From Salpingoeca rosetta (Eukaryota > Protista > Choanoflagellata): a stretch of DNA of 64,000 nt. The notes below the pieces were generated by a model that searched no databases, was not told where the DNA came from, and worked only from the letters and a program-made list of their open reading frames with translations. The position numbers and the translations under genes were made by a program. The stretch covers positions 746,186 to 810,185 of the forward strand of contig JAWQFM010000030.1 of assembly GCA_033442325.1 (NCBI GenBank), in the 5' to 3' direction. Each line of letters begins with the position of its first letter. Position 1 is the stretch's first letter. Shown here piece after piece: positions 45,328 to 46,680 of the stretch.

Positions 45328-46676
45328 ATGGCGCGTCGCCAGCAAGACGATGTGTATGATGATGATGGGGAGTTTGATGATGATGATGACGATGATGATT
45401 TCCAGGACAATTATCGTCCAACGATTGTGCGCCGGGATGCCCGCTCCGTATGGCAAGAGCTTTCCCTGGTTCGCCCTGAAAGAGTGCCAGCAGCACGAGA
45501 CCCACCGACATCGGTGACATCCGGCGGGGTTCGCTCTGATGTGAACGTGGATGCGCTTCCCAATGTGCGCAGGATGGACACGCGTCGAGATCCAAACGCT
45601 CCTGCAAGTTCAAGTTCCAGCAGCAGAAGGCGACGTGTTCAGGCTGCATCAGCATCAAGATCAGCATCAAGACCAGCAGCAAGGTCAGCATCAAGATCAG
45701 CATCAAGAGCACACAGAGGGAGCGGGCGAAGAGGAGCAGGGCGAATGCCAGGACCAGGGCGAAGTCGAAGGCTAAGCGCAGGTGAAGTACGGTTGCTGGA
45801 GGAGAGAGATCCCAATACCAGCTATGTTGATCGTTTCCCTTTGAACAGAGTAGGAGGTGTGAGGTTCGGGAGAAGGGGACTGGGCATGGGTCCTGGAGCT
45901 CGGATCGCAGCTGATATGCCGTACAGCTTGACACCACCACCACGGTTTTCAATTCGAGTGCCTCAGCCACCGATGACGAACGTAAACCCTGAGCAGCAAA
46001 TCGATCCAATCGTTCTGAATGCATTGGGGCAGGACGATGGTGATTTTGATATGTATGTGAGGGAACGCAATCCGAGGACGAACCGAATGCTTGCAAGACC
46101 CGTGCGGAACATTAACAGCATGGATGAATCGTCGAGTGAGATTGTGGCGCAGTGGCAACGACGACTGCTTATTCAGCTGAGCAAGTGCTTGCCCGTGTAT
46201 GAGACGGTGAACGACGCGAATGGAAATCCTGCATACTACATCAAGCATTTGGCACCGCTTGTGTATGATGAGCAGGGAAACCTGAAGGTGGTGAAAGGCA
46301 TTGCAAAAGGTGTGAATCCTACGTTCGTGAGCAATGGTGTGTCTGGTCAAGTGTTTTCTGGTCTGTATTGGCAGTTCAGGCGTGAGCAGCGTAGACGGGA
46401 TGGGTCGCAGGTGGAGTTTGTTGGTTCGCACCTGTGCCATCGTGGAAACACGAACCCGTTGCTGGTGTATGAGACAAGGGGTGATGAACATCAGTTGTAT
46501 GAGTGGGTTGTGCCTTGTGTGAATCCGGCGCATTTGTGTGGAGAGACGAGCACGTTGAATACGTCACGCATTGGTTGTCCAGGCATGGCCATTGGTTGCA
46601 GTCATACCCCAAAGTGTTTGCGTCCTGCTGCTGAATCGTCCATGCGTTCATACCACTACAGCTTTGGCTTTGACGC

Positions 46677-46680
<4 letters not shown>
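45328..46680 (+). CDS. His-Cys box (His-Me finger, I-PpoI family) homing endonuclease with a long disordered N-terminus
   Basis: C-terminal GSHLCH..[insert]..CVNPAHLCGETSTLNTSRIGCPG..GCSHTPKCL parallels the I-PpoI motif SHLCH..CxNPxHLCxE...N..R..CPG...C.H...CL. Confidence 0.9.

What the first reader, a model, noticed from the sequence alone, without database searches (positions are those of the whole stretch)
45328..46680. Free-standing I-PpoI-family His-Cys box endonuclease as the terminal viral gene, about 130 bp from the rDNA breakpoint
Seen: the catalytic and Zn-binding motif appears intact (SHLCH, CVNPAHL, N, CPG, CSH..C), with a ~25-aa insert between SHLCH and CVNP. A ~300-aa acidic then Arg/Ser-rich (SASR repeat) N-terminus precedes it, and the gene has its own AATAAA. 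No group I intron core was recognised around it. Established: such nucleases are typically encoded in nuclear rDNA group I introns. Inference: the virus captured an intron homing nuclease as its integration enzyme, and the basic tail may direct it to the nucleolus.
Basis: partly seen in the sequence, partly recalled or inferred. Interest (0 to 1): 0.9.

Follow-up and report, generated by a model that had tools for sequence, protein, structure and literature searches.

The report
rDNA-targeting nuclease of a virus-like element
A choanoflagellate chromosome end carries a 28-kb virus-like element whose last gene is an intact, intron-less relative of the I-PpoI homing nuclease; it abuts a 28S rRNA gene broken at the same nucleotide as in an unrelated environmental copy, so the nuclease probably aims the element at ribosomal DNA.

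Summary
ORF 45328-46680 (+) is an intact 450-aa gene. Its C-terminal ~200 aa are a true His-Cys box (His-Me finger) nuclease domain: a family profile hits I-PpoI at E=5.6e-9, and the catalytic His and Asn and seven zinc ligands are conserved. The 23-aa insert is shared by the whole small subfamily, which has 6 representatives among 1.84 billion proteins.

The window is Salpingoeca rosetta, the end of scaffold GL832962.1. The order is telomere repeats, a ~28-kb element encoding a protein-primed polymerase, then a 28S gene cut off after GTTACC, 128 nt past the stop codon. I found no group I intron, no 3' part of the 28S and no integrase.

The closest relative (43-44% identity, metagenome contig L001) has the same divergent neighbour gene. 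It lies next to a 28S broken at exactly the same nucleotide. Shorter relatives sit antisense inside insertions at the classical I-PpoI site.

I conclude that the nuclease most likely cuts this palindromic 28S site and so places the element there. This is inferred, not shown. Nucleolar targeting by the basic tail is untested. A capsid gene could not be demonstrated, so "viral" remains provisional.

The parts
45328..46680 (+). His-Cys box endonuclease gene, 450 aa, intact ORF (stop codon included)
45328..46059 (+). N-terminal extension (aa 1-244): acidic run, then Arg/Ser-rich low-complexity tract. Not conserved in sequence; an acidic run recurs in P0001 and P0004
46060..46677 (+). Conserved nuclease domain (aa 245-450) shared with P0001-P0006
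46426..46617 (+). His-Cys box core (aa 367-430): SHLCH, the subfamily insert, CVNPAHL, N411 and the second zinc cluster C417/C424/H426/C430
46681..46808 (+). 3' untranslated stretch and right terminus of the element: GT microsatellite 46681-46716, AATAAA 46721-46726
46809..50418 (-). 28S rRNA gene truncated at its 3' side. True homology runs from the 5' end to Rfam model position ~2823 (ends ...GAAAAGTTACC). The part 3' of the site is absent from the window
51303..51484 (-). 5.8S rRNA gene of the same unit
52135..54230 (-). 18S rRNA gene of the same unit, transcribed towards the element and the telomere
18541..46808 (.). Virus-like element, about 28.3 kb, with 15 large intact ORFs. The left boundary is approximate. 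No terminal inverted repeats found
24498..30143 (+). Protein-primed family B DNA polymerase (PF03175, E=2e-18); annotated in the public record as 1835 aa
19528..20388 (+). ORF with Walker A (GTSMSGKT) and Walker B-like (LIIDD) motifs. Possible packaging ATPase, at motif level only
44508..45305 (-). Divergent neighbour gene, 265 aa, no known family. Its ATG lies 22 nt from the nuclease ATG; the same arrangement (24 nt, shared 10-nt block) is in L001
17853..18210 (.). CCCTAA telomere repeats, about 59 copies. The first base is the last base of scaffold GL832962.1
18340..18475 (+). Short 28S fragment in sense orientation at the element's telomere-side end. Its first 100 nt are identical to the reverse complement of 47006-47105
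18510..18540 (.). Three irregular CCCCTAA repeats directly left of the element

Best explanation
The ORF encodes a functional-looking His-Cys box (His-Me finger) endonuclease of a rare subfamily. It is a resident gene of the right-end module of a ~28-kb element that replicates with a protein-primed polymerase, not an intron remnant. Most likely the enzyme recognises the conserved, pseudo-palindromic 28S sequence around GTTACC/ACAGGGATAAC and makes a double-strand break there, and the linear element is joined to the broken rDNA end. In S. rosetta the rDNA unit is transcribed towards the chromosome end. The break therefore removed the distal 28S part, and the element's far end became the new chromosome terminus, capped by telomere repeats. 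Shown: the domain homology and conserved catalytic and zinc residues; the absence of an intron and of a 3' exon; the position at the junction; the identical junction nucleotide and conserved neighbour gene in an independent relative; the dyad symmetry of the site. Inferred: cleavage at this site, use of the break for integration, and the order of events at the telomere side.
For: Domain: profile against I-PpoI E=5.6e-9; hhalign 98.2% against a PF05551 protein, pairing SHLCH with SHLCH and placing the insert as a gap; all 7 subfamily members hit PF05551. Invariant across the family: C370, H371, C397, N399, P400, H402, E406, N411, R414, C417, C424, H426, C430. Host and place: the polymerase gene maps to S. 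rosetta GL832962.1, and the telomere tract ends exactly at the scaffold end. There is no assembly gap between 17853 and 60509. Junction: 28S homology stops after GTTACC in the window and in L001, both followed by GG, whereas intact 28S reads GTTACC-AC-AGGGATAAC. In both, the nuclease gene is antisense to the rRNA and is the gene nearest the junction. Synteny: a divergent ATG lies 22 versus 24 nt away, with a shared 10-nt block. Site symmetry: 7 of 9 dyad pairs; 17-mers this symmetric (>=6 of 8 pairs) make up 0.39% of that 28S. This fits the palindromic-site constraint on homodimeric His-Cys box enzymes (PMC3943268). No integrase or recombinase family was found in the 15 large ORFs. No group I intron hit. 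No 28S sequence 3' of the site in the window.
Against: No cleavage data exist. Only two junctions are known, and L001 is a 2.3-kb contig in which no polymerase or capsid gene is visible. The L001 junction is complex: a ~205-nt spacer, then ~50 nt of the 28S 3' flank, before the element-side sequence. One could therefore place the insertion 50 nt further downstream. The nuclease has the lowest GC3 of the element's ORFs (0.49 against 0.53-0.79) and lacks the TCATTTTC upstream motif of several element genes, so it may be a late or loosely integrated addition. A second family member in the same genome (PTSG_02071) has neither element genes nor 28S beside it. The structure prediction failed (pLDDT 41). 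The single-protein Pfam score is below the cut-off. No terminal inverted repeats and no capsid gene were demonstrated.
Confidence: 0.55

Rival explanations
1. Host shut-off or selfish nuclease, with accidental capture. The enzyme does cut 28S rDNA or another target for the element's benefit, for example to cripple host ribosome synthesis or to compete with related elements. Integration is not its function. The observed insertions are by-products of end joining at a frequently broken site.
For: Free-standing homing nuclease genes without an integration role are common in phages and polinton-like viruses (PMC3943268; PMC12220804). The S. rosetta insertion is one-sided and terminal, which looks more like break healing than orderly integration. 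The nuclease has atypical GC3 and lacks the shared upstream motif.
Against: Two independent loci share the junction to the nucleotide, with the same gene orientation and the same end of the element facing the break. This is more regular than accidental capture predicts. No other integration enzyme was found in the element.
Confidence: 0.2
2. Relic of an rDNA insertion. The nuclease gene belonged to an intron-like or cassette-like insertion in the 28S, and the polymerase element merely recombined next to it, so the gene is not part of the element.
For: The sister clade (P0005, P0002) and L012 are antisense ORFs inside 1.2-1.3 kb insertions in 28S at CTCTCTTAA|GGTAGCC. The window gene is also antisense to the adjacent 28S. 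Its GC3 differs from the rest of the element.
Against: No RF00028 hit at E<=10. No 28S sequence 3' of the site anywhere in 64 kb. Only 22 nt separate the gene from the element's next gene, and this divergent pair is conserved in L001. The gene carries a ~245-aa extension that the intron-type relatives lack.
Confidence: 0.12
3. Decayed or domesticated gene with no nuclease activity. The ORF survives but the 23-aa insert and the long low-complexity N-terminus have abolished cleavage, and the junction is historical.
For: Pfam score below the gathering cut-off. Insert inside the first zinc site. The fourth ligand of zinc site 1 could not be aligned. AF2 model of low confidence.
Against: The insert (17-23 aa) is present in all members, including those in rDNA insertions, so it is a family trait and not damage. 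The catalytic His and Asn and seven zinc ligands are invariant across 25-53% identical proteins, which indicates purifying selection. The ORF is uninterrupted over 450 codons.
Confidence: 0.08
4. Assembly artefact. The join between element and rDNA is a chimera of the 2011 S. rosetta assembly.
For: rDNA and subtelomeres are hard to assemble. The scaffolds contain 100-N gaps nearby.
Against: The junction lies in a gap-free contig from 17853 to 60509. The same junction nucleotide occurs in an independent metagenome contig.
Confidence: 0.05

Closest known systems
I-PpoI (His-Cys box homing endonuclease of the Physarum polycephalum Pp.LSU3 group I intron)
   Same: Same catalytic motif and both zinc clusters in the C-terminal half (profile E=5.6e-9). 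The target is a conserved, partly palindromic 28S sequence. It is a nuclear, rDNA-directed enzyme.
   Different: Not in an intron. 450 aa instead of 163, with a ~245-aa acidic/basic extension. A 17-23-aa insert between the CH of SHLCH and the next Cys. The associated site is about 550 model positions downstream of the I-PpoI site. The N-terminal DNA-binding half is not alignable.
Antisense His-Cys box ORFs in insertions at the I-PpoI site of 28S
   Same: Same subfamily (33-36% identity) with the same insert. Also antisense to the rRNA.
   Different: They are short (~176 aa), are flanked by 28S on both sides, lie at a different site, and have no polymerase element beside them.
rDNA-specific mobile elements such as R2 and R1 retrotransposons (cited in PMC3943268)
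   Same: They use a self-encoded sequence-specific nuclease to insert at one conserved 28S position, which inactivates that rDNA unit.
   Different: Those are RNA-copied retroelements with unrelated nucleases. Here a 28-kb DNA element with its own DNA polymerase is involved.
Polintons/Mavericks and polinton-like viruses
   Same: Size (14-40 kb), protein-primed polymerase, residence in protist genomes. Homing nuclease genes (GIY-YIG, HNH) occur in them (PMC12220804).
   Different: No rve integrase or tyrosine recombinase, no terminal inverted repeats, and no recognisable capsid, protease or A32-type ATPase by Pfam. A His-Cys box nuclease and a fixed rDNA site have not been reported for them in the papers I could search.
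Free-standing homing endonuclease genes of phage T4 (PMC3943268)
   Same: A homing nuclease gene outside any intron that can promote inheritance of itself and flanking DNA.
   Different: Those act between phage genomes by homologous repair. Here the target is a host rRNA gene and the outcome is chromosomal residence.
Subtelomeric rDNA with integrated viral elements in Aurantiochytrium limacinum (bioRxiv 10.1101/2023.06.15.545109)
   Same: rDNA units transcribed towards the telomere, and a virus-like element lodged between rDNA and the chromosome end.
   Different: That element is a ~270-kb herpes-like (mirusvirus-type) genome between complete rDNA sets. No site-specific nuclease or defined 28S breakpoint is described.

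Membership tests
His-Cys box homing endonucleases (PF05551, I-PpoI type) | Catalytic His in the SHLCH-type motif and the metal-binding Asn of the His-Me finger | tested here: met
   H368 (in SHLCH) and N411 align with the corresponding I-PpoI and PF05551 positions. N411 is invariant in the family.
His-Cys box homing endonucleases (PF05551, I-PpoI type) | Two zinc clusters built from conserved Cys/His | tested here: met
   C370, C397, H402 (site 1) and C417, C424, H426, C430 (site 2) are invariant. The fourth ligand of site 1 lies in the unalignable N-terminal half; invariant H307 is a candidate only.
His-Cys box homing endonucleases (PF05551, I-PpoI type) | Score above the curated Pfam cut-off | tested here: not met
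   23.1 bits (whole protein) and 25.8 bits (domain) against a cut-off of 27. The family profile nevertheless finds I-PpoI at E=5.6e-9, and hhalign gives 98.2%.
His-Cys box homing endonucleases (PF05551, I-PpoI type) | Beta-beta-alpha-metal fold and homodimer | tested here: inconclusive
   The AF2 model with 7 sequences gave mean pLDDT 41.2, so no fold search was run.
His-Cys box homing endonucleases (PF05551, I-PpoI type) | Encoded inside a nuclear rDNA group I intron | tested here: not met
   No RF00028 match at E<=10 over 44000-47500. No 3' exon in the window.
His-Cys box homing endonucleases (PF05551, I-PpoI type) | Sequence-specific cleavage of the intron-less rDNA allele | not testable with these tools
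   Only indirect evidence: two independent junctions at the same nucleotide and a pseudo-palindromic site.
Polinton/Maverick and polinton-like viruses | Protein-primed family B DNA polymerase | tested here: met
   PF03175, E=2e-18, in ORF 24498-30143.
Polinton/Maverick and polinton-like viruses | Retrovirus-like (rve) integrase or tyrosine recombinase | tested here: not met
   No such Pfam hit in the 15 large ORFs. Small or spliced ORFs were not scanned.
Polinton/Maverick and polinton-like viruses | Double jelly-roll major capsid protein and penton protein | tested here: inconclusive
   Only a faint PF16903 hit (E=0.14) in ORF 38981-40624. No PDB, PHROG or viral-contig relatives. AF2 of ORF 42102-44264 gave pLDDT 33.8.
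Polinton/Maverick and polinton-like viruses | Terminal inverted repeats | tested here: not met
   No inverted match longer than 19 nt between 18201-20000 and 45001-46850. The left end may be rearranged.
Polinton/Maverick and polinton-like viruses | FtsK/A32-type packaging ATPase | tested here: inconclusive
   Walker A and B-like motifs in ORF 19528-20388, but no Pfam or PDB match.

The most novel reading that the evidence does not exclude
A lineage of polymerase-encoding, virus-like DNA elements of choanoflagellates and other protists has replaced the usual integrase with an I-PpoI-type nuclease. The nuclease homes the whole 28-kb genome to one invariant position in the peptidyl-transferase region of 28S rDNA. 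Where the rDNA is subtelomeric, the element becomes the chromosome end itself, capped by host telomere repeats. That would be a DNA-virus counterpart of R2-type rDNA specialists, in the closest living relatives of animals.
Probability: 0.35. Interest if true: 0.9.

Novelty: new variant of a known kind. Interest (0 to 1): 0.8.

Why it matters
His-Cys box nucleases have been treated as passengers of nuclear rDNA group I introns. Large DNA elements of the polinton type are thought to integrate with retroviral-type integrases or recombinases. A free-standing His-Cys box enzyme that aims a polymerase-encoding element at a fixed 28S position would link these two fields. It would add a new integration strategy for eukaryotic DNA elements. 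It would also explain how such an element can end up as a telomere-capped chromosome terminus, and it would provide a naturally evolved enzyme with a new, universally conserved rDNA target. Because the host is Salpingoeca rosetta, a genetically tractable model with much public sequence data, the descriptive predictions (junctions, expression, strain polymorphism) can be checked now.

Tried and rejected
1. Word-indexed protein search with the full protein (region 200-450) found nothing. With the domain profile it found only two known members. The exhaustive HMMER search was needed.
2. Exact look-ups of the 450-aa ORF, the 1881-aa polymerase ORF and the 265-aa neighbour found no record. The public gene models differ from the plain ORFs; the polymerase is annotated as 1835 aa.
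3. Scans of viral contigs with the nuclease, the domain profile, two capsid candidates and the broken-site DNA pattern gave no relative. A metagenome scan with the 720-aa ORF also gave none.
4. AF2 of the nuclease domain gave pLDDT 41 and AF2 of the 720-aa ORF gave pLDDT 34. Both are unusable, so no fold search was run.
5. PHROGs and PDB sequence searches of the other element ORFs gave nothing meaningful.
6. I first read the interstitial-looking telomere tract and the inverted spacer copy at 13937-17644 as a palindromic or fused chromosome end. I rejected this: a 100-N spacer precedes the tract, and the coordinate mapping shows the tract is the scaffold end, so 1-17752 belongs to another scaffold.
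7. Terminal inverted repeats were not found.
8. Similarity between the L001 terminal region and either end of the S. rosetta element gave only 9-10-nt matches, which are not significant.
9. Literature searches for a His-Cys box nuclease in polinton-like elements, or for an S. rosetta element of this kind, found none in the held library.
10. No phylogeny including I-PpoI itself was built, because no tool returned its full sequence. Pairwise identities within the subfamily are given instead.

Every motif in this report was copied from tool output.

Full report
WHAT IS THERE

ORF 45328-46680 (+) is an uninterrupted 450-codon frame with an ATG start. Taken alone, the protein matches Pfam PF05551 (zf-His_Me_endon) at E=9.3e-5 and 23.1 bits. 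The domain alone scores 25.8 bits. Both are below the curated 27-bit cut-off. It also matches I-PpoI chains in the PDB at E~1e-3 over aa 396-433.

An exhaustive HMMER search of 1.84 billion representative proteins with aa 200-450 returned only six relatives. P0001 scored E=7.8e-41 and four others scored 1e-17 to 1e-21. This is a rare subfamily.

A profile of the seven sequences finds I-PpoI at E=5.6e-9. hhalign against a protein that passes the Pfam threshold (L011 ORF, 57 bits) gives 98.2% probability. That alignment pairs SHLCH with SHLCH and places the stretch between the CH and the next Cys as an insertion.

The insert is 17-23 aa long in all seven members. It is a family trait, not damage.

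Thirteen positions in or next to the His-Cys box are invariant. They include:
- zinc site 1: C370, C397, H402;
- the metal-binding Asn: N411;
- zinc site 2: C417, C424, H426, C430.

H368, the counterpart of the catalytic His, is present in six of the seven members. The fourth ligand of zinc site 1 lies in the N-terminal half, which does not align with I-PpoI. AF2 with this shallow alignment failed (pLDDT 41), so the fold is inferred from sequence only.

The first ~245 aa are low-complexity, with 15 acidic residues among the first 30 and then an Arg/Ser-rich tract. They are not conserved in sequence, but P0001 and P0004 also carry an acidic run before their domains.

WHERE IT IS

The polymerase ORF of the element is 100% identical to a protein of Salpingoeca rosetta assembly GCA_000188695.1, scaffold GL832962.1. 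The host is therefore a choanoflagellate, a protist and not an animal.

The coordinate mapping shows that window base 17853, the first base of a ~59-copy CCCTAA tract, is the last base of that scaffold. The 100 N before it are a spacer, and 1-17752 comes from another scaffold.

From the chromosome end inward the order is:
- telomere repeats (17853-18210);
- a short rearranged stretch holding a 136-nt 28S fragment and three CCCCTAA repeats;
- the element (about 18541-46808);
- a 28S gene on the minus strand whose homology stops at 46809, after ...GAAAAGTTACC (Rfam model position ~2823 of 3401);
- 5.8S, 18S and the spacer.

The contig has no gap from 17853 to 60509. No sequence from the 28S 3' of the site exists anywhere in the window. 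No group I intron model matches at E<=10. The nuclease stop codon is 128 nt from the junction, with a GT microsatellite and an AATAAA in between.

THE ELEMENT

It has 15 large intact ORFs.

One is a protein-primed family B polymerase (PF03175, E=2e-18). One has Walker A and B-like motifs.

No integrase, recombinase, protease or capsid family was detected. The exception is a faint Capsid_N hint at E=0.14. AF2 of the 720-aa candidate failed. No terminal inverted repeats were found. 'Virus-like' is therefore a reasonable label, but 'virus' is not demonstrated.

An 8-mer, TCATTTTC, occurs five times in the 64 kb. All five copies are inside the element and in the sense orientation of a nearby ORF, four of them 24-69 nt upstream of that ORF's first ATG. 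It is likely a promoter element. The nuclease gene has no exact copy of it and has the lowest GC3 of the element's ORFs.

THE RELATIVES AND WHAT THEY SAY

The subfamily splits into three pairs.

1. P0005 and P0002 (53% identical, ~176 aa). P0005 lies antisense inside a 1.3-kb insertion in a complete 28S, between CTCTCTTAA and GGTAGCC. This is the classical I-PpoI position. L002 shares the insertion's non-coding flanks. L012 carries a more distant His-Cys box ORF at the same place. No group I intron model matched the L005 insertion at E<=1.

2. P0003 and P0004 (45%). P0003 is S. rosetta PTSG_02071. It lies ~10 kb from the telomere tract at the start of scaffold GL832959.1, with no element genes and no 28S beside it.

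3. The window protein and P0001 (43-44%), both long forms. P0001 is on a 2.3-kb metagenome contig, L001.

Reading L001 downstream of its nuclease gene, and antisense to it, I found 28S sequence. Alignment A5 shows that the 28S homology ends after GTTACC and is followed by GG, exactly as in S. rosetta. An intact 28S (L005) continues AC-AGGGATAAC. In L001 a ~205-nt spacer and then ~50 nt of the 28S immediately 3' of the site follow before the non-rDNA sequence that leads to the gene.

Upstream of the L001 gene, a divergent ATG lies 24 nt from the nuclease ATG. The distance is 22 nt in S. rosetta. Both sit within an identical 10-nt block, and a TCATTTTC motif is close by in L001.

So two proteins only 43% identical, from different sources, share the same neighbour arrangement, the same orientation toward the rDNA and the same junction nucleotide. 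This is the strongest evidence that the association of this clade with this 28S position is specific. It also makes an assembly chimera unlikely.

THE SITE

In intact 28S the 19-mer AGTTACCACAGGGATAACT forms 7 of 9 dyad pairs. Seventeen-mers this symmetric (6 or more of 8 pairs) make up 0.39% of that 28S. His-Cys box enzymes are homodimers constrained to partly palindromic sites (PMC3943268). The S. rosetta 28S copy is uninterrupted at the I-PpoI-equivalent position.

MECHANISM

I think the following is most likely (confidence ~0.55). The enzyme cuts 28S at this site, and the linear element is joined by its nuclease-proximal end to the centromere-side break. Because the unit is transcribed towards the chromosome end, the distal fragment is lost. 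The other end of the element is then healed by telomere addition. The irregular CCCCTAA repeats next to the element, with the long regular tract further out, are compatible with this but do not prove it.

What is shown is homology, residues, position, junction identity, synteny and site symmetry. What is inferred is cleavage, its use for integration and the order of events.

The rivals, with my weights, are:
- a shut-off or selfish nuclease with accidental capture (0.2);
- a relic of an rDNA insertion beside which the element recombined (0.12);
- an inactive gene (0.08);
- an assembly artefact (0.05).

COMPARISON AND NOVELTY

As a protein it is a divergent member of the His-Cys box family by active-site and zinc-site criteria. 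It fails two family habits: residence in a group I intron and the Pfam cut-off.

As a system it works like an rDNA specialist of the R2 type, but it is carried by a DNA element of polinton size that lacks the polinton integrase and terminal repeats. Polinton-like viruses are reported to carry GIY-YIG and HNH nuclease genes and occasional rRNA fragments (PMC12220804). Subtelomeric rDNA with a large integrated virus-like element is described in a thraustochytrid. I found no report of a His-Cys box nuclease in such an element, of a fixed 28S site for one, or of this S. rosetta element. I rate it a new variant of a known kind.

LIMITS

- There are only two junctions, and one lies on a short contig with a complex structure.
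- There is no usable structure model and no capsid evidence.
- There are no expression data.
- The left end of the element is rearranged and unexplained.
- No genes of the element were seen to be broken among the 15 large ORFs; small or spliced genes were not examined.
- In my working thoughts I wrote short I-PpoI and rRNA motifs from memory before the tools showed them. They were not used, and all letters given here come from tool output.

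Noticed in passing
window 17753-17852 and 1-17752: The window is a concatenation. A 100-N spacer separates another S. rosetta scaffold (1-17752) from the reverse-complemented end of GL832962.1. Region 13937-17644 is a ~90% inverted copy of the rDNA spacer at 56320-60409, and 8688-15906 is ~84% identical to the subtelomere of GL832959.1 (L003). Spacer-like repeats therefore recur at several chromosome ends.
   Followed up: partly
window 18211-18540: Between the long telomere tract and the element lies a 136-nt 28S fragment in sense orientation, inverted relative to the neighbouring rDNA. 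Its first 100 nt are identical to the rDNA copy and the next ~35 nt diverge. Three CCCCTAA repeats follow. The origin is unexplained; it may be a trace of successive end-healing events.
   Followed up: partly
window 23426, 24140, 33966, 35809, 42078: TCATTTTC occurs five times in 64 kb. All copies are inside the element and in the sense orientation of a nearby ORF, four of them 24-69 nt upstream of that ORF's first ATG. It is a likely element-specific promoter or initiator motif. One copy also lies next to the divergent neighbour gene in L001.
   Followed up: partly
window 47505-47525 (minus strand): At the I-PpoI-equivalent site the S. rosetta 28S reads ACUUUCUUAAGG where the Rfam consensus has ACUCUCUUAAGG. 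The pairing partner is also changed (GGGAG to GGAAG). The site is uninterrupted. Whether this variant matters for nucleases of the sister clade is unknown.
   Followed up: no
L003 9986-10828 (S. rosetta GL832959.1): A second subfamily member, PTSG_02071 (280 aa, 33% identical), lies ~10 kb from the telomere tract of another scaffold. It has no element genes or 28S next to it, and a 7.7-kb run of N follows.
   Followed up: partly
L011 6929-7040 and 9035-10333 (metagenome contig Ga0307982_1000009, 218 kb): A canonical, insert-less His-Cys box ORF (PF05551, 57 bits) stands free in a GC-rich 218-kb contig. About 2 kb away lies a ~65-nt 28S fragment ending GTTACCACAGG, 5 nt past the S. rosetta break, directly beside TTTAGGG-like repeats. 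This is a third co-occurrence of a His-Cys box gene, this 28S position and telomere-like repeats.
   Followed up: partly
L005 906-2219, L002, L012: Antisense His-Cys box ORFs occur in 1.2-1.3-kb insertions between CTCTCTTAA and GGTAGCC of 28S in three environmental contigs. No Rfam group I intron match was found in L005 at E<=1. These may be introns the model misses, or intron-less insertions.
   Followed up: partly
window 24257-24482, 30174-30318, 30732-30884, 22919-23191: Tandem repeats of 113, 58, 77 and 90 nt lie inside the element. Two arrays flank the polymerase gene, and the unit upstream of it contains a TCATTC-type motif. Their function is unknown.
   Followed up: no
L001 1895-1912: A single CCCTAACCC motif lies between the nuclease gene and the 28S fragments of L001. 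This is reminiscent of the telomere-like repeats at the S. rosetta element's other end, but it is too short to be significant.
   Followed up: partly
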